A stretch of DNA of 64,000 nt from IMG/VR virus record IMGVR_UViG_3300031521_001337, positions 1 to 64,000 of that record; one strand, 5' to 3'. The notes under the pieces were generated by a model. That model did not search any database, had not been told where the DNA came from, and was given only the letters and a program-made list of their open reading frames with translations. Both the position numbers and the translations under genes were made by a program. Shown in pieces: positions 1 through 22,080 of the stretch (position 1 is its first letter; each line of letters opens with the position of its first letter).

Positions 1-1082
1 TCATCGAGCCACCGGTAACTTTTCAGGTAGACCGCGTGGATCAGATTGAATACCTGCCTGCCGTATTGCGTAACCTGCACTTTATCCGCAAAAAGCTCGA
101 CTTCGAATGGGCATTGGTTACCAATCAGGACGGTTTGGGAACACCGGTATATCCACAGGAAAACTTCGATCAGGTACAAGCCAGCTTTCTGAAGACACTT
201 GCAAACGAGGATATTCATTTCGATAAGATATTCATCGATATATCTTTCCCCGAAGATAATTTACCAACACGCAAGCCGGGCACTGCCATGCTTACCGAAT
301 ATTTCACCGAAGCCTACGATTTAGAAGGCTCATTTGTTATTGGCGACCGCTATACAGATGTTGAATTAGCCAAAAATATGGGCTGCAAAGCTATTTTCAT
401 CAGCACCGACGAGGAGATATTGAAGGAAAAAGGACTGACAGCCTACTGCGCATTGCAAACTACCGACTGGAACCGCATCACCGAGTTCCTCTTTGCAGGT
501 GAACGCACTGCCACGGTAAAACGTACCACCAAAGAAACCGATATCCTTATCGAACTGAACTTAGACGGTTCCGGAAAATGCAACATCAACACCGGACTGA
601 AATTTTTCGACCACATGTTGGAACAAATAGGTAAACACTCCGGTTCCGATTTGACCATTCAGGTGAAAGGCGATCTTGAAGTAGACGAGCATCACACCAT
701 CGAAGATACTGCTATTGCGTTAGGCGAAGCGTTTGGCAAGGCATTGGGCAATAAACGTGGCGTAGAACGTTACGGGTTCTATTTACCCATGGACGACTGC
801 TTGTGCTCTGTGGCTCTCGACTTTGGTGGACGTGCCTGGTTAGTGTACGATGCTGAATTTAAACGCGAATATGTGGGCGATTTACCTACCGAAATGGTAC
901 TCCATTTCTTCAAATCATTCAGCGACGCTGCAAAAATGAATCTGAACATTAAAGCCGAAGGCGATAACGAACATCACAAAATTGAAGGTATATTTAAAGC
1001 ATTAGCCAAATCAATCAAAATGGCTGTAAAACGGGATATCTACCAATATGAATTGCCTTCTACCAAGGGAACGATCTTTTAG
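1..1082 (+). CDS. hisB: Bifunctional histidinol-phosphatase / imidazoleglycerol-phosphate dehydratase (5'-truncated by window), host gene
   Basis: Frame is open from position 3 ([10 protein letters not shown]...). HAD motifs TNQDG, RKP and GDRYTD; IGPD motifs [14 protein letters not shown] and NEHHKIE; C-terminal LPSTKG. GC is visibly higher than downstream DNA. Confidence 0.97.
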
Positions 1083-1194
1083 TAGTTTGTAATGTCTTAT
1101 AAATAAATGAGTTACACCGAAATGTTTTTTAAACTTTTTTATTAGCTCCTACCCTATTGTAGATATATAATACAAATTCAATACTACCTAAAAC

Positions 1195-1233
1195 AAAAAA
1201 GCCAACTACATTAACCCTGTAATTGGCTTTTTT
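1195..1233. terminator. Bidirectional intrinsic terminator
   Basis: aaaaaagccaa...ttggctttttt hairpin with A/T tails on both sides. Confidence 0.7.
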
Positions 1234-1437
1234 GACTTCAATATGCTGGTTTTGAGGTTTACGATTTTTGAAAAAATACTGTTTGCGTAAAGAAGGGAGG
1301 GGTGAGGTTTACTCCATTAGTTAATAACATTTTGACCCCATACCCCCTACAGATAGGTTTGAGGGTTGACTAGTAAGTCTAACCACCTAATTGTCAATAT
1401 GTTTTACAAGTAAAACAACTGATTGTGATAACAATTT

Positions 1438-1592
1438 CAAATGATACGCAAAAAATCTCAAATGATACGTCGGAATTTTCAAATGATACGCTCGAGTTTG
1501 TATGAAAACAGTTAAGTTATTGTGACACAGCGAATTACAAGGTTTCCATATACTTAATATATACTTAATAATTCTATACTTAATGTGGCTGT
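1438..1592 (+). repeat. 155-bp direct repeat copy 1 (iteron origin-like)
   Basis: Matches 34327-34481 with 2 mismatches. CAAATGATACG x3 at 21-bp spacing (1438, 1459, 1480) and TATACTTAAT x3 (1549, 1560, 1575). Confidence 0.95.
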
Positions 1593-1617
1593 ATTCAACA
1601 CATAACGGACTACAAAC

Positions 1618-1651
1618 AAAAAAGGCTGCTACATAATTGTAACAGCCTTTT
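1618..1651 (-). terminator. Intrinsic terminator after 1673..2296
   Basis: aaaaaggctg...cagcctttt hairpin. Confidence 0.7.
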
Positions 1652-1672
1652 AAATTTGGATTGATTTATTGA

Positions 1673-2296
1673 TTAGTCTTCTAATTCAATATCAATACTT
1701 GTATAATCTTCTGAATCTTCTGGATCAATATCATTACAATCAGTAGAATTACTAACTAAATATTTATTAATTAGATCATATTCTTTACTACCTCTTTCGC
1801 AATCTTGACTGATTGTCAACAATTTCTTTGCATCAAGTTCAGTTATATCTTTACCGATAACCAGTTCTGCTTCACGTCTTACTACTTCTCTAACTACTAT
1901 TTTAATTGTTTTACCTTCCATAATGTTGTTTGTTGTTTGTACTGTTTGGTCGTTTTCTTTACCAAATACTAAATTAATGTCGAAAATATCACCCTCTGCT
2001 AAAGAACTATATAATGCAGGTGGCATTATATTTCTACCAGTAATAGCTTTTAAGGCACTAATAAACTCATCTGACTTTGCTATTTCGTCTAAAATAGGTT
2101 GTAATAACGCTTCTAATTTAGGTGTAAATGTATGAGTACTTGTTAAGTATGTATTACTTATCATACCAGATATCATTGCACTCATTCTAATTTTATCTGA
2201 TTCCTCAGCTAAATTTTTAAAAACCATTTGTTTGATGTTTTTCTTAAAAACATCTTCTTGTCCAATTACAAAAATTTCACCCATAATATTAAGCAT
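1673..2296 (-). CDS. Hypothetical protein
   Basis: 207-aa ORF overlapping the upstream gene and followed by a terminator. Confidence 0.7.
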   Translation of the reverse strand: MLNIMGEIFVIGQEDVFKKNIKQMVFKNLAEESDKIRMSAMISGMISNTYLTSTHTFTPKLEALLQPILDEIAKSDEFISALKAITGRNIMPPALYSSLAEGDIFDINLVFGKENDQTVQTTNNIMEGKTIKIVVREVVRREAELVIGKDITELDAKKLLTISQDCERGSKEYDLINKYLVSNSTDCNDIDPEDSEDYTSIDIELED

Positions 2297-2582
2297 TTAA
2301 AAGGTTAATAATTTCTGCCTTCTCTTCTGCACTCATAGTACTTACAGAAGTCTTTAATGCTTCAATTCTTTGTGCTTTAATTTCGGCTTCTTTTTCAGCT
2401 TTCAATGCTGTTAAATTAGCTGTCCATTTCTCACACTTTTCAAGTTGTTCATCACACCTTTTTAGTAGCTCGTCAGATGTTAATAACTTACCAAATGAAG
2501 TACCATAAGAATCTATTGATTCTTTTCTCTGACCTACTTTTTTTACTTGTGCAGCATCTGCACTTTGAATATTTTTATTCAT
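2289..2582 (-). CDS. Hypothetical coiled-coil protein
   Basis: 97-aa ORF with a Bacteroidetes-type promoter upstream (TTTG-17nt-CACCTTTG, 2625-2653). Confidence 0.7.
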   Translation of the reverse strand: MNKNIQSADAAQVKKVGQRKESIDSYGTSFGKLLTSDELLKRCDEQLEKCEKWTANLTALKAEKEAEIKAQRIEALKTSVSTMSAEEKAEIINLLNA

Positions 2583-2694
2583 TTAAATAAAGCAATCTGT
2601 TTTAGTTTGTTTGTGATTGCGATACAAAGGTGCGACAATATGAAAAGCCCAAAAGTAATGGTTAAAATGGTCTAATTTACCTACCCCGCATTAA

Positions 2695-3564
2695 TTAATG
2701 CCACATAGCAGAATATTTATTAAATCTAAAGTCTTGTGTTTTGGTTTTAAACTCTCTATAACAGGACTTTAAATGTTCATCGCCATATAACCAATCTTCA
2801 TTATTATATATACCTGTAAGATATATTAATTTTGAAATAAAAGTAAATTTATTCAAAGATGCTATTTTATCTCCATTTTTAACAGGTTTATCTACAACAT
2901 ATTGTTTAAAGAAGTCAATCATTATTTTAGTGAATAGACAAATACGTGCATAATTTGGTGCATCTTTAGAATTACTTTCTTCAAGCTTAGCAGAATTTAA
3001 AACACTACCAGTTTTTAAACCGTTCAATTCCTCATCACATAACGAAGCCATTAAATAAATCGCTGTATTATTATCTATGACAATACTTTTTTTACCAATT
3101 TTCAACGTAATAGTAGCTTTCTGTTTAAATTCAATATCATTACCATTAATTTTACCTGTTGAATTATCATCTATAGCTTTTACAAATTTTTTCATTTGAC
3201 CAGCTGGACTTTCTTTTGCAACCAAACCACCTACACAATTAGTATATGCAAAATCAAATGCAAATAACAGAAAATACCAAAACTTTTTAGAATCTATATT
3301 AAACGCTTTTAATATGAGTTGTATATTTTTATCTTCTTCATCACCATTCATATAATCATTATAAGTAAAATTGGTTTTTATTGTACCTTGATTATAATTT
3401 TGCACAAAAGTATATAATCCATTCAATGAACACATTAACATACCATTTCCTTCAGCATCAAAATCTGCATCTGGAAGGTGCGTATAAACCATATTACATA
3501 CATATTCTAATAATGGTTCTTCTTCTATACAATCGTCTATATCAAACTGATCTACTACACTCAT
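2695..3564 (-). CDS. Hypothetical protein (standard code, TGG Trp only)
   Basis: Likely start MSVVDQF; TACTTTTG -7 element at 3583-3590. Confidence 0.7.
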   Translation of the reverse strand: MSVVDQFDIDDCIEEEPLLEYVCNMVYTHLPDADFDAEGNGMLMCSLNGLYTFVQNYNQGTIKTNFTYNDYMNGDEEDKNIQLILKAFNIDSKKFWYFLLFAFDFAYTNCVGGLVAKESPAGQMKKFVKAIDDNSTGKINGNDIEFKQKATITLKIGKKSIVIDNNTAIYLMASLCDEELNGLKTGSVLNSAKLEESNSKDAPNYARICLFTKIMIDFFKQYVVDKPVKNGDKIASLNKFTFISKLIYLTGIYNNEDWLYGDEHLKSCYREFKTKTQDFRFNKYSAMWH

Positions 3565-3590
3565 AATATTGTTATTTTTTGACAAAAGTA

Positions 3591-3625
3591 AAAAAAAGTC
3601 TGTAATCAACAAAGACTACAGACTT
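3591..3625 (-). terminator. Terminator closing the lysis cassette
   Basis: Minus strand aagtctgtagtc...gattacagacttttttt. Confidence 0.7.
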
Positions 3626-3630
3626 CAATA

Positions 3631-3837
3631 TTATTTACCAATCTTTTTATATTGGTAATCTACCCCAAACAAAGCACCTGCAAAGGTGCATATTTCCCCA
3701 AAGGCTACTAAAATACTGTTATGTATAACTCCAATGGGTACTACTCAAAAACCCATAAATAAAAGGCATATCCCAGCCAACACCAATACACAAGCTACTG
3801 CTAATTGTACGTTCAATTTTGTTTCTTTCAAATTCAT
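3631..3837 (-). CDS. Small two-TM holin-like protein (1 in-frame TGA=Trp); absent from ORF track
   Basis: MNLKETKLNVQLAVACVLVLAGICLLFMGF[W]VVPIGVIHNSILVAFGEICTFAGALFGVDYQYKKIGK; resembles Bacteroidetes phage lysis-cassette membrane proteins. Confidence 0.8.
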
Positions 3838-3858
3838 TACTTACTTTTTTATTTGTTT

Positions 3859-4452
3859 CTATTTTAACACCTTTATAAATCGAAAGTCTTTTACCTCTGA
3901 ATGAGGATTTAGTTCTTTCACTTCTATAACCTGTATTGTTTGTTTTTTCTGGAACAACCTTCACAAAAAGAATTTCTTTGGTGGTTTTATTGTTTCACGC
4001 TTATCATAAGTAATTGCTATTACTTCATTTCTTACTTTCAAATCTACATTAAGCGTATCTGGTGCTTTAAATTTCAAATCTAGGCTGTACCATTCATCAC
4101 CAGTTTTAGCTTCATAATCACGAATAAACACACTGTCTTTTAATGTTACAGTATCTTTTATTTGTGTTTGGGAATTTATAAAAACCGTTTCAGTTACCTT
4201 TTTAGGTTTAAGTTTTAATTCACCTATCAACGTTTTTACTTTTAAATCAGATGAATCTTTACTATCCTTCAAATCAGCTAAAGTAAATTGATAAACTACG
4301 TTCTTTCTAACTGATGCTTTATAGTTATTGGTAGCCGTTTTTAGCTCCTCATTCAGTTGTTTTGTGTGGTTATATGAAAACCACAATAAAACCCCACAAA
4401 TCAAAGCTATTGAAGCCAGCAGTATAATTAAATATTTCTTTATTGCTATCAT
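3859..4452 (-). CDS. DUF6549-like, spanin-like lysis protein (1 TGA=Trp)
   Basis: N-terminal TM plus coiled coil; read-through gives PPKKFFL[W]RLFQKKQTIQVIEVKELNPH, ending TAG at 3859. Confidence 0.75.
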
Positions 4453-4838
4453 TACGTTTTTATTAGTTGTTTCTTATTATCACCTTCTCTATATTCTATG
4501 TGAACTCAGGCAAAATTATGTTCATCTATCAACTGTCTAAACTCAAAATGTTCTTTTATTAGCTTATAAAGTAAAGCATTATCATCACAATCTAAATCAG
4601 CACAAGTACCTAATAAATGACCAGAAGTACTTACACCACCAACCGCTTTATTTACATCTGGACTTCTAAAACCGCTGTTAATTTTAATTGGTTTACCATA
4701 CAATTCCCTCAAAGGATCTAACACATTTGTAACTAATCTTTGCAGATTAGCTACTTGTGTTTCATTAGGAATATTTACTATCTTTTTATCTGTATGAACT
4801 AGTTCTTCATACGTGAATCATTTTGATACTATTTTCAT
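4452..4838 (-). CDS. Endolysin, peptidase M15A (2 TGA=Trp)
   Basis: LDPLRELYGKPIKINSGFRS, SGHLLGTCAD; read-through restores the catalytic [W]VHIEY motif. Confidence 0.9.
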
Positions 4839-4855
4839 ATTACATTTATTTGATA

Positions 4856-5890
4856 TTATTGTAATGGTGGTTGATTTGAAACGATAGCTGAGTAAGTTTG
4901 TGACCATCCATCATTATTAAAATTCACTCTATAATAGATTGTTGAACCTACAGAAAATTTTGATATTGCACTTGATAAATCAAAATATGCTGAGCCACTT
5001 TGTACTGATGTTCCTGGACTTGTAGTATTAGCATTACAAGTAGCTGATGTGTTAGTTAGGAACTCATTAGTAGTAAAATTAGAATCTGATGCAATTTCAA
5101 ATTTGATATTTACATTATTGTTTTGAACCCTCAAATCACCTAAAATATTTAATGATGCAATTATACCCGAATTACCTGTTTTTCTATATGCAAAGAAAGT
5201 CAAATCTGTATATCTCATTGAATTTGTCCAAGGGTCTGATGGTATTACTACAGAAAAAATATAACATTCACCATCTCCATTATTAGAGATTGCATCAATA
5301 CCACTTATCCATCTTCTATCGGGTGAACTCTTATGTACAACTTTAAACCAAGCTGTTGAACCAACAGTTAAAGCACTACCACCATCGGGTGGGCTTTGTG
5401 GGTTAATTTGAAATTGAAAATATGGGTAATATCCTGTTTGGTCACTTATCATTTTTACAAAGTTTGTATGTACAAAATCATTACCATATCTATTAAAATA
5501 TACATCAAAAGTATGAGCAATTGTAACAGGTGTTTTTGTGCTCATATCTTCTTTTGCATATACTATAGGTAATCTCATATATATAGGTGAATAATAATTT
5601 ATTGAATCGCTAGTTTTATACCCATTGTTTCCAGTGAACGTTATCCAGTTGTGGTCATAATTTCTAAAAACCCCAAGCGGATAACCTTGTTTTGGGAAAA
5701 CTGTTTGATTTTCATTTTGTCTTTGATATGGTGTTTTTCCAAAGTATGCAGATTGTTCTTTATAATCGGGACTATTAAAACCATATTCATTAACTAATGA
5801 ACTCAAACACAATGTTGATACATTATGAGTATTTAAACCTAGTTCTTGCCCTACTAATGTAGTAGTAATATTTGTTGATGGTAATGCCAT
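4856..5890 (-). CDS. Tail-associated protein
   Basis: MALPSTNITTTLVGQELG N-terminus typical of genes following Bacteroidetes phage fibres. Confidence 0.6.
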   Translation of the reverse strand: MALPSTNITTTLVGQELGLNTHNVSTLCLSSLVNEYGFNSPDYKEQSAYFGKTPYQRQNENQTVFPKQGYPLGVFRNYDHNWITFTGNNGYKTSDSINYYSPIYMRLPIVYAKEDMSTKTPVTIAHTFDVYFNRYGNDFVHTNFVKMISDQTGYYPYFQFQINPQSPPDGGSALTVGSTAWFKVVHKSSPDRRWISGIDAISNNGDGECYIFSVVIPSDPWTNSMRYTDLTFFAYRKTGNSGIIASLNILGDLRVQNNNVNIKFEIASDSNFTTNEFLTNTSATCNANTTSPGTSVQSGSAYFDLSSAISKFSVGSTIYYRVNFNNDGWSQTYSAIVSNQPPLQ

Positions 5891-5891
5891 A

Positions 5892-8800
5892 TTATTTATT
5901 TTTTAAAGTATTTATTTCTTGTGTTAGTTCTTGAATTGCTCCGATTAAATATGGTATTAACTTGATATAATCAACTGATAAAAATTCATCGTTATAAATG
6001 TTATGTACTAGGTTTGGAAGTACTTCTTTTAATTGCTGAGCAATAACACCAACATCTGTTTTTTCATCCTTATTTGGGTTTAATTCTTTAGCTTTTTCAT
6101 TCCAATTATATTGCACTGGATTTAATTTATTGATTACGTCCAAAGAATTATTTAATGGTTGAATGTTTTCTTTTAACCGTTCATCAGATGCACTATAAGC
6201 TACTATTTCACCCGCTGCTATTACATTTCCATTTGAAATAAAATTACTAGCAGTAACATTACCATTGAAATGAGAATTATCACTTCCATCAATATAAAAT
6301 GGAGTTGTACCATCGGAAGCATTTCTAATTGAAAATCCAGTGTTTGAAATTCCTTGTATTGAATTTTTAATATAGTATTGCTTAACTCCTGCTTGTGAAC
6401 CTTGTAATTGTATTCTTGCCTCACCTCCAACATCATTTCTAATTAGCACAGCACTTTTGTTAATTAGAGCAATATCACCTGTTCCACTTTCAGCACTAAT
6501 ATATACTGCATTGCCAGTAAACTGTAAGTAACCTTGTCTAACTGTATTTGCTGAATTATAACCACTCAAATAAGCGGCATCAGCAATCATTTTTATTCCC
6601 TCACCTGCATAAGTATTAACAGTTCCAGTTGCCATTAAAGTACCATTCACTGCCAACTTATACCCTTGGTCAGAAATATATCCAATCCCAGTATTACCAT
6701 TAGGGCTAATATAAAACCTCCCAATATCGGGTACTGTATTAGCACTTTGGGTTGATTGAGTAGTAATTGCAAAATCTCCATAAGACTGATAATCTGTATG
6801 TATGAACCATTTCCTAGAACTACCATTAGATACATTATGGTCAAATGATAACATTCCTACCCAACCTGAACCGCTAGGCAATGATAATCTTCCGTTAATT
6901 CCCATCCCACCATTAAGAACTAATGCTCCTGTTGATGGTGATAGTGATTGAGTTGTGTTTGGTATACTTACTACTCCATTACTTTCAATAGTCAATAAGG
7001 GAGTAGTTGCATAATTAAAAGTAAAGGCTTTGTTTCCCCACTGTCCAACAGAATTAAAAATCATTGACCCATAATTATCTCCACTACTAATAAAATAGTC
7101 AAAAGAAGAACCTGAACCAAATTTTAATTTACCTGAATAATTATTAGATGGTATATTAATAGCAAAATAATCACCTCTAGCTGATGCATTTGTCCCATCA
7201 TCACTTATCAAACTATTTACAAAATTACTCCCATTCCATTTAGGAATGTAGTTTGTTGATAAACTTGATAAATCTTGTGTAGCAATATTATTTACGCCAA
7301 TAAAATTTCTAATTTGAGTACTAGTAGCAGGACTCATTCTAGCATTAGGGGCATCGTATACCATTACATAACTTACCGTAGACGCAAAATCAGCGCCATA
7401 GTATTTTAAACCATTTACCATTTCAGCATTCAAATTCCCCACCATAGTAGTAGAATTTACAGTTAATGGTGCTGTTCCAGTTGCTACTGTTGATTGTAGT
7501 TGAGTTGCATTTACTGTAGAAGTAAAAGTTACTGCTCCTGTTTTACTTAACCTAAATCTTTCTGTATAAGTATGTGCAATAGCTTCTGTATTGTATGCTC
7601 TAGCATCAGAATAATCAATTACTAAATCAGTACCACTTCCACTGTATTTGTTGGCAATTCTATAAACTCTTTGGTCAGTTCCACCATCGGCATATAAGTA
7701 CATAGCACTACCATAATCAGAATCCAATGCTCTTAATTCAACACTATGATATGTTACACCAAATTTGCCTTTTCCATACGCTGTAACATCCCCACTAATC
7801 CACATATTTGCAGATTGTGCAGAGCTATTTTGGTTTAATATGTGGTCGTTATTGTTGGTATAAGCCGATGAACCTAGACCTAACCAAGATTGTATTTGAT
7901 TTTGTGTAAAATTATAAACATATCCGTTAGAGTAACCTCCTAGTAAATTAGTAGGTACGGATTGATTAGCAGTTCCATTATATACTGTTCCTAGTGTTAT
8001 ACTAGAGCCTAAAGTCCCACTAGAAGATACAAAGTCTCCAGTGTTACTACTGGCTGCTGAACCGAATGTTCTAGTAGGTAGTGGAGTATAACCTAAAGCA
8101 GTAGTAACCATTCCTGAGTTGATACCAGTTATCCATCCACCGTAGTTACCAAGATTATTATTAAATTGACTGAGATTAGTTGGAAAATCACTAACCTGCG
8201 ACTTAGTAATGCTTATGCCAGTAGATTTATTCCATGCAATAAATATAGGGTCAGTTTCAGTAAAACTAGATAAATAGTTATGTGTATGAGTAGTTATTAG
8301 TCCAGTAAGAACTCCTTCAACTTGGGATTTAGTTATACTAGAAATATAACCACTAGGATTTGTAGAATTATAGGGAGTGTATCCTAATGCTGTAGTAACT
8401 TGAGTTCCAGTTATACCAGTAAGATATCCATATCCAGTCCAAGGAGTACCAGTAACAAATGAACCATAATTACCTAAATCATTAGTAAATTGAGATAATA
8501 ATGTAGGTTTAGAAGTTATTTCTGAATAAGCGTAGCTTGGTTTTGTAGAAGCTTTAGCTCATGAATAAACATCACTAGCTGGTAAAGTTGTAGGATAATC
8601 TGGTAAACCATATCCACTAGTTGTGGTAGGATGGCTACCTGAGTATCAATATCCAACTGATGTTCATGGAGTTCCAGAAACATATGATGTATTATCATAA
8701 GTAATAGAAGTTCCAGACATTCTAACTAGACCAGTACCATTTAATTGAGCTTGAGCTCCAATATCTAATAAAGTTAATCCATGTGGATTACCGCTATTTA

Positions 8801-10631
8801 TTTGTGAATGATCATAAGCAATTTTTCCACGATCTCCTCTATATGCTGTTGCTGAAGTTTCTCCTAAAGCTAAAGATGAGCTGATAATAGCATAAGTAGT
8901 TCCACCTCATCTATAAGTTAAATTAGTGGTTGTGTCTATGTATATCTTACCAGATTCTCCAACTGTAGGAAATAAACTTATAGAAGTATATTCTAATACA
9001 TCATCTACATAAGATGGTAATTGTGAATTTTTTACAAAGCCATTTGAATCAAGTTCTGCCAATCCATTATTAGCTCCTTTTAATGATACATCTAATTTTA
9101 AATCTAATGCACTTTGTGTAGCAGTAGATATTGGTTTCAATAAATCTGATGTATTATCTACATTATCTAAACCTACAGCAGCCTTATTTAAAGGTTGGAA
9201 TGTTTTATCACCTCTTCAGTAATCAGTAATTAATCCTGATGTTATATTAGGTTCTTTAGTATTTAAAGCTAATTGAGTTAAGATTGATATAGGTTTGTCT
9301 ATATCTCTAGTATTATCTACTTGACTTAATCCAATTTGTGCTTTAGTTGTAAAGTGAGGATTATTTGTATTAGTAATGTGAGCTTGTATATTAGCATTAG
9401 CTGGTTCTTTAGTAGCTAATTTAATATTGTTATTAGCAATAGTTTCATAAGGTGTTAAATCTTGATCATCACTATGAGCTACGTGTATTTTAGCAATATC
9501 TACATTTAATACTAAAGAATATCCAGGAATTTTTACAACTAATCCAGATAGATCTTGATCATCACTATGTGGTGCATGTAAATTTGTCTTTTCTGAATCA
9601 GTTACATAATTATCATCAGTTCCTTTTTTAGGTTCTGCATAATTTTGAACATAAGTTTCAGTTGCTAATCCTGTTATACTTGGAATATTAGGTTTATTTA
9701 ATATTAAAGTATCTCCACTAGTTGCATTTCAATCAGCATTTACATTTGCTTCTGCTCCAGTTTGAATTCCATCTAATTTATTTTTATATGTATTAGTAAA
9801 ATCATTAGTAGATAATCCTTTTCCAGTTTCTTTTGGTTGTAATACTGATAAATCTTGATCTCCAGTATTCTTACCACTTACTAAATCTAATGCTGCTTTA
9901 TTACTATGTAAATGTGTTTCTAAGAACGCGGAATCATAAGCAGCTTTTAATTCATCTGTTAAATCATTAGTACTTAATCCTTTTCCGAGAATTTTATCAA
10001 CTTTAGTTCCTAATGCTGCATATAATCCTTCTACTTCTCCAGTAGATAATGGAGCATTTAAATATAAATGAATCAAAGCATTAGTAATCGTTTTAACTAA
10101 TATTGCAAAATCATCTTGCATATAATAATTTGGGTCACTATTAAATCTCATCATTACTTCTGATAAGTATTGTAATAATTCAAACAAACTATTAATTTGA
10201 GGAAGTAATGTTGGATCGGATGGAAATAAACTTCCAGATCCTGGTGTGATACTTGGGATTGCATTTACAGATTCATATGATCCTAATACATCATTATTAC
10301 TTGGTGAATTAGTATTCAATGATAAATCTGTAGGAACTGCATTATCGTATACCGGAATATCAGTATTTAATAACATCCCATTATTTTGTATAGTAGGTGT
10401 TACTACTATTTCATTTGAAAGATTATTGAATTCTGTTGTATTCAAATCTAATAATGATGGATTATTCTGAGATTCATGTTGAATGAATTCAGAATTTAAT
10501 AAAGTAACAGTTAAAGTAGTTGATATAATATCGCTATCTTTAACTGTTACTTCATCTGGTACATCAGTTACTATTAAATTATCTACTGTAGGAATTACAA
10601 TATCTGTTAATAGTATATTGCTTTGTATCAT
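5892..10631 (-). CDS. Long tail fibre (about 1579 aa) with C-terminal peptidase S74 chaperone domain; 6 TGA=Trp
   Basis: Track ORFs 9729..10631, 8907..9140 and 5892..8111 are one frame joined only by TGA: NVNAD[W]NATSG, DY[W]RGDKT, TYR[W]GG, PASDVYS[W]AK. Ends with SDERLKENI...GVIAQ. Confidence 0.9.
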
Positions 10632-10653
10632 TTATTTATTTTAAAATATATAA

Positions 10654-12111
10654 TTATTTTGGAATATATCTACAAGTTATATGTGACCCTGGGGTATCAA
10701 TTAAATATATTGTATTTGCATCAAAATAAGAAACAACGTATGATACACCCGAATCTTCGTAAACCTGTAAGTTAAATATATCTTTTGGTTCTTTAGATAA
10801 AACGAATTCAGTATTAACAGAATCTGTAGCACCAGTTGGAGTTTCTTGTATTATATTTTTAGGTGGAATATATTCACTTATAATATCCCATTTATTACTA
10901 ATTCTATTAGTTATTAATGTTATAGAACTATTAGGTGGAATTTGATAAGGTACTCCATGTCCTAAATTTTCAATTTGCGCATCAAGATCTAAAACCAGTA
11001 TATTACTAACATTTGTAGAATTTTCATTCTTAAATATTAATTGTTTTCCGTCAACAACATCATTTATTACTGGTAATCATAAGTTAATATTTGTACCATT
11101 TGTTATTATTATGTCATAAGTATTTAAAACATCAAAAACACCAGCTTCAGTAAAGTTAATAATTACAGGATTTTTTATTGGCAACCCATCTATAATATCT
11201 GCATTAATTCTTTTATTATCTTTTGGTTTAATATGAATAGGATCTTCTCCATTTATAAGATTATAAACAGTATTTTCATCATTATTGTACGCAGCTACAG
11301 CCCCTTCTGTACCACTAAAATCAGAACCAATTAAATCACCATTTTGATAATGGGTTGTAGCTAAATTCTGTTGTAATCAAACTTGATTACCAATAGTTAC
11401 TGAATGATAAGTAATTCCATCAATTACAATACTACCTTCATTAATTGAATTATCTTTAATAAGTCTAATTGATCTTCCAGTTTCTTTTATACTTGGAACA
11501 CTTAATAAAACATATGCATTATCATTACTAATATCAATTAGTTTACCTTCTGAATTACTATATTCATCATAAGCTCAAAAACCCAAATGTCTATTTATTA
11601 AATAAAATGAACCATCTGTATCTCTTACTCCTGAACCTCTAGCATTAAAATTAACACTATTAGAAGCATCTACATTTGGACTTTCTCAATAAGTATTTCC
11701 TGTTTCTTTTAATTTTCCACCTGAAACATCATCTCCACCTAAAAAATTACTTAATGTTTGAAAATCAGATAAAGTTGGAATATGTCAACCACTAGGTGCT
11801 ATACTTCTAGAATCTATTACAATATATCAATTATAAAGTCTTCCATATTTAACATCTTGGACTAACATTGTAGATTGTTCTCATTTACTTGTATCTCCAC
11901 CACTACCATATTCTTTAACTATTAAATCAACATCTTCTAACCCGTTTCTAAATCAATATTCAACTCCGTTAATATTTAAAGTTAATTTATCATGTCTATA
12001 TGGACGAGGTACATTAATTAACCCCTCTTCAATTGTTTCTCAAGGACCGTATCTATCATCAATAGATTTTGGTGCTCGTATTTGTAAGTTATCATTAAAA
12101 TCTATTGCCAT
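10654..12111 (-). CDS. Virion protein with Fib_succ_major (FISUMP) domain, 485 aa, 9 TGA=Trp; absent from ORF track
   Basis: YGRLYN[W]Y, APSG[W]HIPT, GGKLKETGNTY[W]ESPN, IGNQV[W]LQQNL. Confidence 0.88.
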
Positions 12112-12112
12112 A

Positions 12113-12841
12113 TTATGCAGGTATTTGTCCAAGTGATTCTGCTACATATAATGAAGCTACTTGTGTTGAATAATTAGTCATATATATTTTATAACTTTTA
12201 TCTAATAGTGTTTCTGGAATTCTAATTGTCATTATAGTTTCAGTATCAAATAGATTTCTTGTTCCACCTATATCTCCACTATTTTGATTATCAACATATC
12301 ATATTGCTTTAGATTGAATATCTGATGGAATTGCAAACCATAAATAATCTGTATTATTAGAGTTGTAAGGAATGTTTAATGCTTCACTTGGATCTCCATA
12401 AACCATAGTTCCAGAATTAATCAATGATTGATTTTTACTTGGTTTAGTATTACTTACAACTTTACCTCAGAAATATGGAGGTGTATAAGGTTCTGGAATA
12501 ATACCACTAGGATCATCAACTGTAATTACATCTACATTATCGTATACACGTTGTCATGTATAAATAGTTTGTGGTGTATTTACATTTTTATAGAATTCAT
12601 TAGTTCTTTGCATTTCTTCTATAATCTTAGGATTGTTTCTAATTATATCTTTTCTAAATTTCTTTAGTTTTACTTGTACTGTTGAAGGTTCTCCTGATCA
12701 ACTTGCTCAATCAAATACTTCATCGACTACAATTAAAGCCATTATGTCATTTGATAATTTTTTATCATCTATAGCTAAATATTCAAGATTTCTCAAATAT
12801 TTAACTGTAGTTGATACTATTGATTGTTTAACTTCTTCCAT
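12113..12841 (-). CDS. Putative structural/tail protein, 242 aa, 5 TGA=Trp
   Basis: Open from MEEVKQSIV to TAA at 12113 under code 4; abuts both neighbours. Confidence 0.8.
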
Positions 12842-12842
12842 T

Positions 12843-13454
12843 TTATTTACAATTACAATCATTCAATACTCTTGAATTATCACTTCTTAGTCAAGGTGAT
12901 CAAGAGATAAATTGTTTCTTTATAATATCATAAAACATTTCAGCATCATCAAATCGTTCAAGTCTCATGGCTTCTAAATGAGCATATAAGAACATATAAT
13001 TTCTGATTAATGTTTGATAATCATTTGTTGTAATACATCTTGCATCTAAATTAAGTAAGTAATCTTTTAAAAGAATATATACTTTATTTACATCTGATGT
13101 TACTCCAATAACATCTGGTATAAGTGGTACTGGTAATGTTGGATTACCTGGTGTAGGTTCAATTCACTCTACTCCAAATTGCACATAAAATAATGTACTT
13201 GCCAAATTACCATCAACACCAGGTTCAATTTGAAATCCACTTAAAGCCTCAGTAGATATTCTCATAATTTCTTTTGTAGAAGTTCTTTGTAATAGATGTG
13301 ATACATCTCTTCAAAGATCATCTGTACTATTTATTGGTATAGCATCATATTTCTTAATAAATAGTTTATTAAATAAATAATTTGTTGGACACTCTACACT
13401 AAATTCTAGATATTTACTATCTGGTGAAATTCTTAGTAAGTTTATTTGAATCAT
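12843..13454 (-). CDS. crAss-type tail hub/fibre-attachment-like protein, 203 aa, 4 TGA=Trp
   Basis: MIQINLLRISPDSKYLEF... ending DCNCK; C-terminal CxC as in crAss-like tail proteins. Confidence 0.75.
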
Positions 13455-13459
13455 GATTA

Positions 13460-13690
13460 TTAGTCTTGTTTAGTTATTTTAGAAGTTAATCCCATTGCAC
13501 CACATGCTACTAACACGTATCCACAAACCTTAAAAATAATTGGAGCAACTCCATATTGTTGTAAATCTATAACTCCATTCATAACTAATATACCGAAGGC
13601 TGCACCTCCGAGTATAATAGATATATTAGTTATTTTTTTAAATATTGCTGGACTTTCTGTGGTCCATCTTTGTTTTAGTTCTTTAAACAT
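13460..13690 (-). CDS. Holin-like two-TM protein
   Basis: MFKELKQRWTTESPAIFKKI followed by two hydrophobic helices. Confidence 0.7.
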   Translation of the reverse strand: MFKELKQRWTTESPAIFKKITNISIILGGAAFGILVMNGVIDLQQYGVAPIIFKVCGYVLVACGAMGLTSKITKQD

Positions 13691-13700
13691 ATAAATAAGT

Positions 13701-15896
13701 TTAGCTGTTTCTAACTTCATCATTACGATGATTAGCATCTAATAATTGTGCTCCTTCAAGTTTGATTCTTGTTTTATCGTCTTCCAATTTAGCAGCATTA
13801 TATTCTGATAAATTTTTAGCTTCATACCATCCAAGTTCTTTATCGAATGATAATCTTTCTCTATCCATCTCCATTTTCTCTTGATTGTTTTTACCAACCT
13901 GAGCTTGTAGTTTTGAATTTTCTTGTTGAAGTTGTTTTAATTGTTGTTGTAATTGTTCGGATTGTTGTTGTAATTGTCCAAGTTGATCATTTTCTTTTTT
14001 CTTCTTAGCTAATGATAACTTAACATCTTCTTTCATTTTAGTTAAACCTTTCGATGTAATAATTTCAATTAATGTTTCTGGATCAACCAATCCTCCTTTT
14101 ACTAATTCCATTCCTAATTGTTTGATAGTTTCTTGTTCTTTCATAATTTCAGAACTATCACCAATATGAATATCATAATCAGTTGTTGTATAATGTTCAG
14201 GTAATGCTGTAAATATTTTATTTAATCTATCACCTAATATAAGTGACCCACTCATTCCTTTCTTATAAACAATTTTAGCAAGATTAAGAATATCAATTAA
14301 GATTTCTCTTGTTATTAAGTCCATAATTTGATAGTATTGTTTAGTAATATAAGAAGAATTTCTTACACCTACTGCAACATTTGTTACAGCATCTCGTTGT
14401 TCTATTCCACCTAATTTTTCTTTAAATACACCTGTAATCATTGAACAAGTATCTTCAATTCTTTGAATCGCTAAATCAAAAGCTTGTATAGTATTAAATT
14501 TTAATGTATCATCAAATCCATTCATAGCAGTATTAAGCATTTGACCTTCTTGTGAAGAATCGTATAATTTCATACCAGCTTTACCATAAGCTTTAAATTT
14601 CATTAATCTTTCAGCTAAATCTGCACCTAATACTTTAGGTAAGTGAGCTATATCAATTAAATCTCCCGCAGTACCTGATTCAGATATTACGTTATCTCTC
14701 ATAAAATTAATCAAGTCATATTTGTCTTGCAAATTCGCTGTCTTTAATACTAGAGAGAAAGGATCGCCATTTCTATCAGAATAGAACATACCATTTACTG
14801 TTAATGTACAATGTGTTTTATCATCTACACTTCTAACTACATCCTCACATTTACCTGTAGTAATATAAATATTAGTAGCTATACGTACACCTTCATAACG
14901 ATTAGTAATATATTTGTCATCTTCTTTTTCAGTCTTTAATCATTCAACTTCATATACTGGAAAAGTTCTAAAATATTTAGAAGTACTTCTTTCATAAGGT
15001 AATAGAGGAGTTATTTCAAATCCCCCAAGTATACCATCTGACATTGTATTTCCTGTAACTGAATCATAACTTCTAAGATAAGTTGTTGCTGATCCATCAT
15101 TAGCAAAATCTTGTAATGTATCTAATGATTCTAAATCATCAGGTTTTAATGAATCTCCATACTTTGCAAGTATTTGATCCTTAGTTAAATAATCTCTAAT
15201 TACAGAACGTGCCGAATCTTTAAGATAAGGTGATTCTGGATTTCTATCAATGAATGTATTTATTGGATTTAATACTCTAAGTTTTACATTTGATTTACTA
15301 ACTGATGGACATACTTTATAATAAGCTGTCGCACTAACTAATAAATCTGTTAGTAATATTTTTCTTTGATTTTCAAAATCAATTATTCGAGATTGCATTG
15401 TTCAATCAACTATATTTTGTCCTGCTATTTCATAGTTAGACATAAAATTTCTATCGAGTGATTCATGTAATTCTTGAAGTTCTAATTCAATTTGTTTATC
15501 AGGAGCATCTGATCCTATTGTAGAACTATATACAGCATTCTTTAAATGCTTATTTAATTCTTTAGCAATGTTATCATGTATGTGTAATTGTTTATCTCTA
15601 TCAATATTTGATAATGTTGTATGGTCTTTACAAGAAATTTTAGGAAGAACTGGCGTTGATAAGTATTCACCAATTAAAACATCTACGTGTTTTCTAACTA
15701 ATGGTACAAATTCAATTGATGTAGGAGTACCTATCCCATAATTTTCTTCTAAATGTCTGAATTGTTCAGGGTCTCTTTTACCATGATAATAGTTATAGGC
15801 TTTAATGATTTGGGTTTTTTCATAAACCAATTCATTAATAGCTCTATCTATATTATCCATTATATCTTTTTCTTTATCGTCAATTTGTTTATCCAT
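13701..15896 (-). CDS. Portal protein (crAss-like), 731 aa, 2 TGA=Trp
   Basis: Three in-frame track ORFs joined by TGA at 15402 and 14940; KAYNYYHGKRDPEQFRHLEENYGIGTPT, PVYEVE[W]LKT, GGIEQRDAVTNV. Confidence 0.93.
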
Positions 15897-15898
15897 TT

Positions 15899-16171
15899 TT
15901 ATTCTTCTCTTGTTTCAGAGTTTCTATATACTTTATATACTTCTTGTCTAACATAATTTCTAACTCTTAATTCTGTGTATACATAATTTAAGAATTCTTC
16001 GTCAGTTTCACAGTCTATAGCAAATGAGGTTTGCACCATGTAACTTGGAATACCTAAAACACACTTATAACCAGGATTGAGTTTATCAACTCTTATTAAT
16101 CCTGTATAGTCAGCTTTATATCAGCTCTTTATATAATCACGAATCGCTTGCGCTAATTCTAGCTCGTCCAT
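15899..16171 (-). CDS. Conserved crAss-like protein between terminase and portal, 90 aa, 1 TGA
   Basis: MDELELAQAIRDYIKS[W]YKADYTGLIRV...EEFLNYVYTELRVR. Confidence 0.8.
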
Positions 16172-18224
16172 CTCTATTGTCTTTTGCTGGTATTATACCA
16201 TGATGTTTATAACCTTTATTATCTGTTCACCAACCTATGTTTTGGAATCCTTTACCTTCTACTTCTTTTGCTTCAGGACGTTTAACTGACATTTCTTCAT
16301 CACCAAGTTCACACATTCCCATTGCAGCTACGATATCAAAGTCTTTCTTTCCTTCATCCGTATAATCTAATAATTGATCAACCATATCTTTAAACGCCAT
16401 TGTACGGGAGTAATCCAAAATGTAATCATATATTAATTCACGATAATGTAGAATAACTTTAACTGTTGCAGGAGTTCCATACATTTGACTATTACCTTTA
16501 GATACATCAGGCATTGTAGACCTTGGTCTTTTCATTAATAGATGTAAATATTTTTTATCTCTAAAATAAGTAATAATAGCTGTTCTTGTTGATTCTAATA
16601 CAGCTTGACATCCATAATAAGTTAATAGTTTTGCTGCTGCATCGTAAGCTTCTCTAGGATCTTTAGGTCTGTCTTTATACATTGCTACATAAACAGGATC
16701 AGATTGTCCGAACACTCTTTTCTTTATAACAATACAAAATTCAGATCCTTTACCATCAGCACTTGCTGAATCAGCAGTACCAATATCAATAGAGTCAATT
16801 CCACCTACGTATAAGTTTTTATAATCTGTCCCTAATTCGGACATTAAAGGATGTTCTATAATTTGGATTTTTCCATCTTGTGCATCCTCTCTTCATTTAA
16901 CCCCATCTGCTCTATCATCTCCATCTCGTTTTCATACAAGATGTCCTGAATGTATTGTAGGAGTTGATTTGTAAATTTCTATTTGTGCAAGTTGTTCTGC
17001 AAGTTCTTCTCTAGGAAATAAATTATCAGCATGTTGTATAAGAGCTTCTTCAATAGTAAAACAATACTCTGACTTAAATTCTAGTAAATCCTTTGGACTA
17101 TTAACTAATTTAATTCTTTCTTGTTCATACCAATCTTTAGCTTTTTCTAAATTACATCATCCTCGTTTATCAACTAAATCATAAACAACTCTATAAGCTG
17201 GAATAAATAATCCACTTAATATGTATCTACCATCTCTAGTATAATTATGTTTAACAGGTAAAATATTATATGCAGTTGGATCATTTGTCATTCTTTTAAG
17301 TCCTTCCATAGAACTAGCTTTAGATGATCCACCTGTACCAAATGCAATCTTTCTACCAACGCGTTTACCTCCAAGTACTGTTATTAATGCAGTACCTTTA
17401 ACTCATTTTTTCATCAAAACAGGATCTGCTCCTGCTTCTTCGTAAATTAGAATTTGTGTTCTATCACCCCTTAACTTATCGGGTTCATCACATACTAATC
17501 CTTCTACTTCTGACTTATGACTGTCTGGCGCTTCACCACCATCTTTATCTTTCTTAGATGCTCTTTTATGAGTCTTAGAATTTGCTACCATTCTAACCCT
17601 TTTGAAAGCTCCTTCTGTATTTTCATTTAATCAATCCATTTGAATCCATATCTTATCAAGTGTTGGTTTCAAATGCTTTTCTGAAAACGTAGAAACTACT
17701 GAACGAAAGTTAGGAATTGTTGTATATGGTCTAGTTATAAAACTAGAAGCCATTTCCGAGAATCCGATACCACGACTTTTAAGTACTGAAGTATCTTTCT
17801 TTAATTTTTCACACATTTCCAAGTAATGGAAATATTCGTATTGAAAAACAAGAAACTCAGGAAATCCATAAGATTGATTAATTGTTTCTGAATCAGAAGA
17901 TTTAAGGTTATAAAAATTAATGAAGAAATAATTATCTCCAGTTATACGATAACCATTGACTTCATATCCTTCATTACATCTACGTATTCTTTCTTTCCAT
18001 CAATCTCTATGAGTTTTAGAACCCATAGGTATAGATGATGGACTATATCTACCTGTTTTTAATTTGTTAATTGCATCTTCTCTAAATCAATCAGGATTAA
18101 AGTCTAATGCATCAACATCATTAATAGGGCGATATTTAGTCATAAAGAAAGATTTATAACTATCGAAATATTCAATTTTATCATCTGGACCAAAATCTCA
18201 TGTTATTCCATCAAGTATTTTCAT
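16116..18224 (-). CDS. terL: Terminase large subunit, 702 aa, about 10 TGA=Trp
   Basis: One frame: YRITGDNYFFINFY, LKSRGIGFSE (Walker A region), RGDRTQILIYEEAG (Walker B), YVGGIDSID nuclease motif, FDIVAAMGM. Confidence 0.95.
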
Positions 18225-19036
18225 ATAAAACCTCCCGCTGTTTTTCTTTTACCTTTAGCACATGCTGAAATATTAGCATGATTTATATTTAATTCTTTTT
18301 CTGCATCAGTTATACTAACAAATTCCTTAATAAAAATATTATCTTTTGAATATTGTATTATAGAAATAGTATGAATTCCTTTAGTTGATTGTTTTCCTCT
18401 TTTGCTTTTTTCTGGAATTATATTATCTTTAGAATCAATATAAAATTTTCAAATAAACCCACATGTTGTTAAATTCTTTCCTAAACAAACACTACCTATA
18501 TTTTTAGCACTATAACCTAGTTCTCTTTCAATAATTGCAGCACTTTCTCAAGTTTTTATATATTTTCCAGTTTTATCATATTGATTAACTTTTTTTGAAT
18601 AAGTTTTTTCAGAACTTCCAAATCTTGGATTTAATTCTCCTTTAAATTTTTCAGATTGATTCTTTTTCATATCATCAGTTCAACGATCTTTTTTCTTTTG
18701 AATTTGTTCTTCAGTTTCTTTTACTCCTAATCTATGTTGATTTCCACCACTACATATATTATATCCAGTTTTTACACAATCATATTTTGAAATATATTCA
18801 ATTTCTAATTCATTCAATCTATCTTGTAATTCTGATTTTAATTCGAAATCTATTACTTCTAATATACTATGTTCAAAATTATTAAAACCATATTTCTTAA
18901 TAGCATTAAATAGTTTTTTCTGATTTTTACAATTATGAAATGTTTTATATTCACTCAATCTTTTTTTCATGTTGACTGTTTGTCCAACATAACATTTACC
19001 ACTTGGTGATATTAATTTATATATAAATCCTTTCAT
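18203..19036 (-). CDS. GIY-YIG homing endonuclease with NUMOD1 repeats, 4 TGA=Trp
   Basis: GFIYKL...CYVGQT; read-through gives TTCGFI[W]KF and TAGGFI[W]KY. Confidence 0.88.
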
Positions 19037-19038
19037 AA

Positions 19039-19614: not shown

Positions 19615-19619
19615 AATTT

Positions 19620-20807: not shown

Positions 20808-20823
20808 TTTAATTGTTTAGTGA

Positions 20824-21420: not shown

Positions 21421-21659
21421 TATTGTATTTTCAAAAGATCTTTAGTATTAAAAGTATCTTTTACAATCTCCCCAGTTGTTGTGAATCACATACATTGAAT
21501 TCCTTGGAAGAAATCATTCTTTACATCAGAAGTTCTAATAGTTTTAGTAACTTTTTTTACCACAATCATAGTGGGTTTATTTGGTACATCTTGTCTAAGA
21601 CTTACTACATCTCCAGGTAGGAAAAACTGCTTATCGTTGTTTCGTTGTTCATTAATCAT
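21420..21659 (-). CDS. DUF2158/YodC-like small protein, 1 TGA
   Basis: FLPGDVVSL...PTMIV...GIQCM[W]FTTTGEIVKDTFNTKDL. Confidence 0.75.
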
Positions 21660-22077: not shown

Positions 22078-22080
22078 TTT

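What the first reader, a model, noticed from the sequence alone, without database searches (positions are those of the whole stretch)
1265..1592. Second copy of the phage origin plus a terminus-like motif at the host junction: possible satellite
Seen: 1438-1592 equals 34327-34481 at 153 of 155 bp, and identity is confined to the iterons and AT-rich repeats. Nearby, TTTTTGAAAAAAT...GGGTG...TACCCCC (1265-1347) echoes 34636-34698 at the start of the early arm, in the opposite order relative to the origin. No rep gene lies beside the left copy, only three standard-code hypothetical genes, two with host-type -7 elements upstream. Inference: an integrated element carrying cis-copies of the helper origin and packaging or terminus signal, i.e. 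a crAss satellite fused to its helper. Alternatively the repeats allow excision of a 32.9-kb late-gene circle.
Basis: partly seen in the sequence, partly recalled or inferred. Interest (0 to 1): 0.82.

Follow-up and report, generated by a model that had tools for sequence, protein, structure and literature searches.

The report
Orphan phage origin inside a neighbouring prophage
The 155-base repeat is real, but its two copies belong to two different phages that the assembler strung into one contig: a large crAss-like phage that owns the replication origin, and a small resident prophage next to hisB that holds a bare copy of that origin without the initiator gene.

Summary
The repeat is confirmed: 1438-1592 matches 34327-34481 at 153 of 155 bases. 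It holds three 12-bp iterons spaced 21 bp apart and three AT-rich 11-mers.

The window is not one element. It runs through three phages joined at shared sequence:
- 1079 to about 1899 is the left end (attL) of "B", a complete 34.4-kb temperate prophage. B sits between hisB and the next host gene and has its own serine integrase and attR.
- 1619-6235 is "T", a related temperate phage of about 29 kb.
- 6236-8183 is a tail-fibre segment shared by T and "J".
- From 8184 onward is J, a crAss-like phage of about 177 kb that carries Rep and the native origin.

In the window's own sample, a separate contig with B's body stops exactly 127 bases inside the 281-bp stretch that B and T share. At least four other assemblies link hisB, the origin copy and B's body. 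Contigs of J and T from other samples carry one origin copy or none.

So "satellite fused to its helper" and the "32.9-kb circle" come from the assembly path. The "terminus-like" motif is a conserved non-coding block of the B/C/T phages, and its echo near the origin is no better than chance.

What remains is a J origin core without Rep, present in every assembly of B's left end recovered. My reading is that J's Rep acts on it in trans, either amplifying B or serving as a decoy. This is untested.

The parts
36..1082 (+). Host hisB (3' part; the contig starts inside the gene), Paludibacter sp.
   Evidence: 99% aa identity to HisB of MAG Paludibacter sp. LaCa_MAG_3. Pfam IGPD in the gene tables. 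GC 44%.
1079..1088 (.). attL core TTAGTAGTTT of prophage B, overlapping the hisB stop codon. The same 10-mer is found in B's attR.
   Evidence: The attR side lies between B's integrase and the host gene that directly follows hisB in related genomes with an empty site.
1194..1234 (-). Terminator-like hairpin inside the prophage left end
1253..1348 (.). A conserved non-coding block of the B, C and T temperate phages; function unknown.
   Evidence: About 95-96% identical in prophage C. 91% identical in T, where it follows a tRNA_SAD gene next to T's integrase. No Rfam hit. Folds no better than shuffles.
1349..1432 (.). B-specific spacer; start of the variable slot between M and the late terminator
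   Evidence: B, C and T diverge here. C has about 290 nt of other sequence and T has an HNH homing endonuclease gene.
1433..1592 (.). Orphan copy of J's origin core. Iterons at 1437-1448, 1458-1469 and 1479-1490; AT-rich 11-mers at 1548-1558, 1559-1569 and 1574-1584.
   Evidence: Present with the same two SNPs in the four assemblies checked that reach hisB, where it is joined to B's body (L151-L154; a further 7 similar places were not shown).
1593..1618 (.). B-type 26 nt, 5 mismatches against T
1619..1899 (.). 281-bp stretch identical in B and T. It includes the late-operon terminator (1620-1651) and the 3' end of the 207-aa gene. This is the first assembly repeat node.
   Evidence: Zero mismatches to B from 465 to 1899 and to T from 1619 to 8180. 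Contigs end k nt inside it: at 1774 (same sample, k = 127), 1773, and 1759 (k = 141).
1900..6235 (-). T-type lysis and fibre-end module: 207, 97 and 289/305 aa genes, spanin-like gene, M15 endolysin, 344 aa gene, and the fibre C-terminus with its S74 chaperone.
   Evidence: Identical to stand-alone T contigs of about 29 kb (L138, L150).
6236..8183 (-). R, a 1.95-kb central tail-fibre segment shared by T and J. This is the second assembly repeat node.
   Evidence: A second copy lies in the same 213-kb contig at about 182.9-184.8 kb (99.95%), flanked there by T tail genes and a J-specific C-terminus. Contig ends fall at the equivalents of 8180, 8054, 8082 and 6362.
8184..64000 (.). J, a crAss-like phage of about 177 kb. 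Its minus-strand arm is TGA-recoded. It carries terL-like, portal-like, GroEL, RNR and exonuclease genes and homing endonucleases.
30014..30087 (-). J suppressor tRNA, anticodon UCA (reads TGA)
33414..34187 (-). J Rep, a winged-helix initiator
   Evidence: Pfam HTH_24, HTH_36 and TrmB; PHROG families annotated as replication-initiation O-like and DnaD-like.
34198..34532 (.). J's native origin. The core is 34322-34481. Extra iteron-like sites lie only here: 34198-34209, an inverted one at 34282-34300, 34499-34511 and 34520-34532.
   Evidence: The cumulative GC-skew minimum and the switch of gene strand fall here.
34636..34698 (+). 'Echo' of M: a shared 13-mer and a shared 7-mer only
   Evidence: Not above chance.

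Best explanation
The window is an assembly path through three phages of one Paludibacter host, not one element.

Positions 1079 to about 1899 are the attL end of prophage B. B is a complete 34.4-kb HK97-like temperate phage with TGA-recoded lytic genes. It is inserted by a large serine integrase at the 3' end of hisB. Positions 1619-8183 match a related temperate phage of about 29 kb, T. Everything from 8184 onward is J, a crAss-like phage of about 177 kb that owns Rep and the native iteron origin at 34.2-34.5 kb.

B carries an orphan, near-identical copy of J's origin core: three iterons plus the AT-rich unwinding repeats. It sits in the variable non-coding slot between B's late-operon terminator and a conserved block (M). 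No Rep accompanies it.

Inferred mechanism: when J infects a B lysogen, J's Rep binds B's iterons and starts replication at the prophage. This amplifies B in a cell that is about to die, which is origin piracy. The same event competes with J for its initiator, which is a decoy effect like origin-derived PER resistance.

Shown: the anatomy, the boundaries, the different replicons, and the presence of the copy in every assembly of B's left end recovered. Inferred: any Rep binding or firing at the copy.
For: B is a bounded prophage.
- The contig rebuilt from L139, L134 and L001 runs hisB, attL, late genes, early genes, LSR integrase (621 aa), 144 nt, host gene.
- That host gene lies 25-85 nt after hisB in 10 or more related genomes.
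- attL and attR share TTAGTAGTTT.

The join from B into T is an assembly error.
- The window equals B with 0 mismatches over 465-1899, and equals T with 0 mismatches over 1619-8180.
- Contig Ga0311364_10025788, from the window's own sample, carries B's body and ends at window-equivalent 1774, which is 127 nt into the shared node.
- Four listed assemblies, plus 7 similar places not shown, link hisB, the origin copy and B's body.
- Among 24 contigs read that encode the T-type 207-aa protein, only the window contig touches hisB.

T and J are separate entities.
- T is assembled alone at about 29 kb (L138, L150; 22 of 42 blocks have a longest contig of 20-50 kb).
- R occurs twice per 205.3-kb cycle, and contig ends fall k nt inside it.

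The copy is an orphan.
- B, T and C give no tblastn hit to Rep at E <= 10.
- B has iterons only at this locus.

J is the native context.
- Rep is adjacent, extra iteron-like sites flank the core, and the GC-skew minimum is here.
- J contigs from other samples have one copy.

The copy spans exactly the functional core. A random 155-nt piece of a 177-kb genome would rarely do that.

T and J share a 1.95-kb fibre segment at 99.95% identity. This suggests recent DNA exchange between them, which is most simply explained by infection of the same host.
Against: No binding or replication data exist. One chromosomal copy of three iterons is a weak decoy, and PER as described depends on copy number (PMC6356513).

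The fragment could be a neutral recombination scar in a slot that tolerates insertions: T holds a homing endonuclease there and C holds unrelated sequence.

B has its own early module (a 591-aa protein with helicase-like motifs and a tRNA), so it may not need J.

Whether J was present in every sample that holds B was not checked.

No reads were available, so the assembly-path argument rests on contig ends and on cross-sample comparison.
Confidence: 0.6

Rival explanations
1. Neutral scar. A 155-bp piece of J's origin was captured by illegitimate or short-homology recombination in B's insertion-tolerant slot, and it has no function.
For: The slot between M and the late terminator differs in all three phages: HNH gene in T, unrelated 290 nt in C, spacer plus origin copy in B. 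T, which is closely related to B, shows recent DNA exchange with J in the fibre segment R. B itself shares with J only the origin copy. The only differences are 2 SNPs, both in the spacer between iterons and AT repeats, so selection cannot be read from them.
Against: The captured piece matches the functional core exactly, with all three iterons and all three AT repeats intact. It is present in every assembly of B's left end recovered: the four checked, plus 7 similar places not shown.
Confidence: 0.28
2. One reading: one integrated molecule in which a satellite-like element with a second origin copy is fused to its crAss-like helper at hisB, so that the two copies are direct repeats 32.9 kb apart.
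For: The contig as deposited reads that way. A second assembly also gives a 205-kb cycle that joins J and T.
Against: The contig runs on past J into T's circular junction (integrase, M', HNH, lysis genes) instead of an attR, and then repeats 1619-8180. B's body from the same sample dead-ends inside the 281-bp node. The hisB link to T-type genes is unique to this contig. B has its own attR 34.4 kb from hisB. B encodes a full virion module.
Confidence: 0.05
3. The copy is B's own working origin, fired by a B-encoded initiator unrelated to J's Rep. J and B share an origin cassette through module exchange.
For: At the position where T has a 250-aa wHTH initiator-like gene, B has a different early module. 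Temperate phages need an origin, and none other was identified in B.
Against: Iteron specificity is set by the initiator's DNA-binding domains, and no Rep-like protein is detectable in B. The extended iteron array and the adjacent rep gene are in J. In B the copy lies about 22 kb or more from the early genes as integrated (about 12 kb across the circular junction), downstream of the late terminator.
Confidence: 0.07

Closest known systems
Iteron-type origins with an adjacent winged-helix initiator (plasmid Rep/iteron origins such as pPS10 and R6K; P1 oriR with its separate incA iteron array; lambda O/ori-lambda). Comparison from general knowledge.
   Same: Direct 12-bp repeats at about two helical turns (21 bp), next to an AT-rich repeat block. 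In J they lie beside a wHTH Rep gene at the GC-skew minimum. As with P1 incA, there is a second iteron set away from the origin.
   Different: The second set is a full origin core, AT-rich element included, and it sits on a different, unrelated phage genome that has no rep gene.
Origin-derived phage-encoded resistance (PER): Lactococcus phi50/phi31 and S. thermophilus Sfi21 (Foley 1998, as summarised in PMC6356513)
   Same: A non-coding origin fragment of an attacking phage is present in the host without the phage's replication genes. It is expected to be fired by, and to compete for, the phage's replication factors.
   Different: PER was found by cloning origins on multicopy plasmids and depends on copy number. 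Here the copy is natural, single-copy, and carried by a prophage of a different phage type. No resistance phenotype is known.
Phage satellites (P4, SaPI/PICI, PLE). Comparison from general knowledge.
   Same: An integrated element with an integrase that could respond to a larger phage and use one of its functions.
   Different: B has a complete head, tail, packaging and lysis set. Satellites normally carry their own rep and ori and borrow virions; B would do the reverse.
Large-serine-recombinase prophages inserted in or at the end of host genes (for example phiC31- or A118-type integration). Comparison from general knowledge.
   Same: Integrase of 621 aa with Resolvase, Recombinase and Zn-ribbon domains. 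It lies at one prophage end, with a short shared core and insertion at a gene's 3' end.
   Different: Nothing unusual, apart from a decayed duplicate of the hisB 3' end on the attR side.
Repeat-induced chimeric or figure-8 contigs from de Bruijn graph assemblers
   Same: Contig ends lie exactly k nt inside shared segments. One contig wraps around and repeats its start.
   Different: None; this is an ordinary artefact. It does affect public IMG/VR entries of 205-213 kb.

Membership tests
Iteron origin with cognate Rep (J locus, 34.2-34.5 kb) | Three or more direct repeats in helical phase | tested here: met
   Three 12-mers at 21-bp spacing.
Iteron origin with cognate Rep (J locus, 34.2-34.5 kb) | Adjacent AT-rich unwinding element | tested here: met
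   TATACTTAAT x3 at 34438-34473.
Iteron origin with cognate Rep (J locus, 34.2-34.5 kb) | Adjacent initiator gene with winged-helix DNA-binding domains | tested here: met
   Rep at 33414-34187: HTH_24/HTH_36/TrmB, and PHROG replication-initiation families.
Iteron origin with cognate Rep (J locus, 34.2-34.5 kb) | Replication actually starts there | tested here: inconclusive
   Only the GC-skew minimum and the strand switch support it.
Iteron origin with cognate Rep (left copy, 1433-1592) | Cognate initiator encoded by the same element | tested here: not met
   No Rep homolog in B at tblastn E <= 10.
Phage satellite (P4 / PICI / PLE type) | Lacks a full set of virion genes and depends on helper capsids | tested here: not met
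   B has terS, terL, portal, protease, major capsid, tape measure, fibres and lysis genes.
Phage satellite (P4 / PICI / PLE type) | Integrase and defined att sites | tested here: met
   LSR of 621 aa; attL and attR flank 34.4 kb.
Phage satellite (P4 / PICI / PLE type) | Induced or mobilised by a specific helper | not testable with these tools
   Needs infection experiments.
Origin-derived PER (decoy origin) | Non-coding origin fragment of the attacking phage, without its rep gene, resident in the host | tested here: met
Origin-derived PER (decoy origin) | High copy number of the fragment | tested here: not met
   One chromosomal copy per lysogen. Amplification after infection is conceivable but untested.
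Origin-derived PER (decoy origin) | Reduces replication of the cognate phage | not testable with these tools
   Needs a culture system.
Prophage integrated by a large serine recombinase | Resolvase + Recombinase + Zn-ribbon integrase at a prophage end; empty site known in relatives | tested here: met
Crassvirales-like phage (J) | Terminase and portal related to crAss-like phages | tested here: inconclusive
   A terL piece is 25-28% identical to terL of cr124_1, cr10_1 and Azobacteroides phage ProJPt-Bp1. No capsid or RNA polymerase test was done.

The most novel reading that the evidence does not exclude
A complete temperate prophage keeps an orphan copy of the replication origin of an unrelated lytic crAss-like phage of about 177 kb that infects the same host. 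The invader's own Rep then amplifies the prophage, and is diverted from its own origin, during infection. This would be a natural origin-piracy or decoy device between two phages. It may work together with shared TGA-to-Trp decoding, since J's suppressor tRNA would also unlock B's recoded lytic genes.
Probability: 0.33. Interest if true: 0.75.

Novelty: new variant of a known kind. Interest (0 to 1): 0.5.

Why it matters
If the copy works, it would show phage-phage conflict or exploitation carried out through a bare cis-acting origin rather than a protein. It would be a natural counterpart of the engineered PER resistance used in dairy strains, and the reverse of the usual satellite logic.

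It also ties an uncultured crAss-like phage of about 177 kb to a Paludibacter host, through the shared fibre segment and the orphan origin.

On the practical side, the 205-213-kb "jumbo" entries for this phage in public virus collections most likely combine two phages, J of about 177 kb and T of about 29 kb. One entry also carries a piece of a third phage and of the host. This affects genome-size, host and lifestyle calls made from them.

Tried and rejected
- INPHARED megablast and blastn with 1083-9000 and 33000-36000: no match. Rep by tblastn: no match.
- First working model, an integrated "type A" phage of 205 kb with a variant left end. Dropped once B ORFs gave no hit to the window, B's attR and the host flank were found, and R was seen twice per cycle.
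- Idea that M is the attB/attP homology, with the crossover at 1342-1348. Rejected: the empty site in relatives is only 25-85 nt, and B's attR has no M.
- Idea that B and T depend on J for TGA decoding. Weakened: Rfam finds a tRNA in B that ARAGORN missed, and only about 35% of TGA-recoded phages have a detectable suppressor anyway (10.1101/2021.08.26.457843). T still has none.
- Search for an empty attB in the same species. The metagenome scan returned only a B contig. Exact HisB look-up returned only type-C lysogens.
- M as an RNA or terminator: no Rfam hit and folding z-scores of -1.1 to +1.5. M as a cos site: not adjacent to terS.
- C's slot as another orphan origin: no iterons.
Not pursued by other means.
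- Two exact look-ups of B ORFs found nothing on record.

Full report
**1. Observation**

The window is the first 64 kb of IMG/VR contig 3300031521_001337, also named Ga0311364_10000038 (213,486 bp). The repeat is real. 1433-1592 matches 34322-34481 at 98%. The 155-nt core, 1438-1592 against 34327-34481, has 2 mismatches.

Each copy holds three TCAAATGATACG iterons at 21-bp spacing and three TATACTTAAT repeats. hisB occupies 36-1082 with GC 44%, against about 30% to its right. No Rep-like gene lies beside the left copy.

The "echo" of 1265-1347 at 34636-34698 is one shared 13-mer plus one shared 7-mer. A local alignment score that high is reached by 0.4-0.8% of random windows. Neither motif is enriched over shuffles.

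**2. The native origin belongs to J**

Rep (33414-34187, minus strand) has winged-helix domains and hits PHROG families annotated as replication initiators. The gene strand switches here and cumulative GC skew reaches its minimum here. Further iteron-like sites flank the core only at this locus: 34198-34209, an inverted one at 34282-34300, 34499-34511 and 34520-34532.

The minus-strand arm is TGA-recoded. Open-frame coverage rises from 0.71 to 0.94 when TGA is read as Trp. A suppressor tRNA with anticodon UCA lies at 30014-30087.

This arm encodes RNR, GroEL, an exonuclease, homing endonucleases, and terL-like and portal-like proteins. The terL piece is 25-28% identical to Crassvirales terminases. 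I call this phage J.

**3. The left end belongs to prophage B**

Contigs from other samples match the window with 0 mismatches over 465-1899. After 1938 they continue with unrelated sequence. ORFs from 20 kb of that sequence give no tblastn hit to the window.

Rebuilt in full (36,010 bp), this element has the following layout:
- hisB and attL;
- minus-strand late genes: lysis, fibres, tape measure, major capsid, protease, portal, terL, terS;
- plus-strand early genes;
- a 621-aa large serine recombinase;
- 144 nt of spacer;
- a host gene with a signal peptide.

That host gene lies 25-85 nt downstream of hisB in ten or more related Paludibacter and Bacteroidales genomes. B is therefore a bounded 34.4-kb prophage. 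attL and attR share TTAGTAGTTT, which overlaps the hisB stop codon. attR also holds a decayed duplicate of the hisB 3' end. Everything to the right of about 1089 in the window is phage DNA, including M and the origin copy.

A third prophage, C, occupies the same site in MAG LaCa_MAG_3 and three other assemblies. It shares the left end up to 1348 and then differs, and it has no iterons.

**4. The rest of the left part is phage T, and the joins are assembly-path errors**

The 213-kb contig repeats window 1619-8180 at its far end. There the sequence is preceded not by the origin copy but, in order, by a 573-aa serine integrase, a tRNA_SAD gene, a 91%-identical M block, and a TGA-recoded HNH homing endonuclease gene.

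That side continues into terS, terL, portal, protease and capsid genes. These are 78-100% identical in protein to B's. This phage, T, is assembled on its own at about 29 kb. Examples are L138 (28,926 bp) and L150 (29,000 bp). Of 42 collection blocks holding its 207-aa protein, 22 have a longest contig of 20-50 kb.

T and the window diverge at 8183. Window 6236-8183, the central part of the fibre gene (R), occurs a second time in the 213-kb contig. There it has T tail genes on one side and a J-specific C-terminus on the other. The 205.3-kb "cycle" was also assembled as a 205,452-bp contig in another sample. It is most simply read as a figure-8 of J (about 176.6 kb) and T (about 28.7 kb) joined through R.

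Contig ends fall exactly k nt inside the shared nodes:
- the equivalents of 8180 and 8054 (k = 127);
- 8082 (k = 99);
- 6362 (k = 127);
- 1773 and 1774 (k = 127);
- 1759 (k = 141).

The decisive result comes from the window's own sample. A separate 6.4-kb contig carries B's body and stops at window-equivalent 1774, inside the 281-bp node shared by B and T. Four listed assemblies, plus seven similar places, join hisB, the origin copy and B's body. Among the 24 contigs read, only the window contig joins hisB to T-type genes.

The origin copy itself is not an artefact. Its two SNPs phase it to B's flanks within a single 127-mer span, and it recurs in independent assemblies.

**5. What the left copy is**

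It is an orphan copy of J's origin core. It sits in a slot between the conserved block M and the late-operon terminator (1620-1651). That slot differs among the three phages: spacer plus origin copy in B, an HNH gene in T, and 290 nt of other sequence in C.

B has no Rep homolog (tblastn E <= 10) and no other iterons. At the position where T has a 250-aa initiator-like gene, B has a 591-aa protein with helicase-like motifs and a tRNA. J and T contigs from other samples carry one copy or none.

**6. Mechanism (inferred)**

The copy spans exactly the functional unit, recurs in every assembly of B's left end recovered, and matches J's Rep sites. T, a close relative of B, also shares a fibre segment with J at 99.95% identity.

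The most likely activity is therefore binding and firing by J's Rep in trans during infection of a B lysogen. That would amplify the prophage in place. It would also divert J's initiator, as in origin-derived PER resistance (PMC6356513, citing Foley 1998).

I put this at about one in three. A neutral scar is about as likely. B's own origin, fired by an unrelated B initiator, is unlikely.

B's early lytic genes contain in-frame TGA codons. J's suppressor tRNA could therefore also unlock them. The idea that recoded phages sense co-infecting phages in this way was raised in 10.1101/2021.08.26.457843.

**7. The motif M**

M is conserved at 91-96% among B, C and T. It lies between the int/att region and the variable slot. 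It has no Rfam match and no folding signal. It is not next to terS. I found no support for a packaging or terminus role; its function is unknown.

**8. Verdict**

The sequence observation stands. The interpretation as a satellite fused to its helper, and the alternative of a 32.9-kb excisable circle, do not. They rest on a contig that walks through two repeat nodes. The kernel that remains is a heterologous orphan origin kept by a resident prophage. It is a moderate-interest lead, a new variant of known ideas (iteron decoys, PER, satellite-like exploitation), and it needs read-level and experimental tests.

Noticed in passing
window 6236-8183, and the same contig at about 182.9-184.8 kb (L144 12044-13991): The 205-213-kb 'genome' in public collections (IMGVR 3300031521_001337, Ga0302285_10000006) is most likely a figure-8 of two phages, J (about 177 kb) and T (about 29 kb). 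They are joined through a 1.95-kb tail-fibre segment that is identical in both. Genome size and lifestyle calls for these entries would be wrong.
   Followed up: yes
L139 6377-6447 (+), same as L134 5087-5157 (-), in prophage B: Rfam finds a tRNA (45.9 bits) that ARAGORN misses. It has an irregular anticodon arm with loop CUUUCAAC, which contains U-UCA-A. Its body resembles J's Trp-like suppressor tRNA. It is probably a UGA suppressor with an 8-nt loop or a weakened stem.
   Followed up: partly
L136 + L141 (complete T genome): T's late genes are full of in-frame TGA (terL 5, portal 3). Neither ARAGORN nor Rfam finds any tRNA in its roughly 28.7 kb. T may rely on a co-resident phage (J or B) or on an undetected factor for decoding. 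A tRNA_SAD (AlaX-like) gene sits next to its integrase.
   Followed up: partly
window 37201-37278, 39692-39760 (and probably 36165-36240); 58909-58970: Rfam gathering-level hits in J's plus-strand arm: two RAGATH-1 hammerhead ribozymes, with a third related repeat copy at 36165-36221, and a Pistol ribozyme.
   Followed up: no
window 53952-54037 (+): A second tRNA-like gene in J (Rfam 47.5 bits, 86 nt) that ARAGORN did not report. Anticodon not determined.
   Followed up: no
type B attR (rebuilt contig 35426-35569; L139 about 15903-16046): The host side of attR holds a decayed duplicate of the hisB 3' end (it reads ..IPFTKGML*), followed by a spacer like that of empty sites in relatives. This suggests an older integration that replaced the end of the gene.
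   Followed up: partly
L015, L099-L101 (Paludibacter MAG LaCa_MAG_3 and three metagenome contigs): A third prophage type (C) occupies the same hisB site. No empty site was found in this host species in any collection searched.
   Followed up: partly
window 20824-21420, 29430-30017; T slot (L009 about 6590-7130): Several HNH and GIY-YIG homing endonuclease genes are present. One lies next to J's suppressor tRNA. One fills, in T, the very slot that holds the origin copy in B.
   Followed up: no
type B rebuilt contig 21511-22644 and 30965-32191: Cargo genes in standard code inside prophage B: an AbiC-like protein and a PIN_8-domain protein. These are possible defence genes.
   Followed up: no
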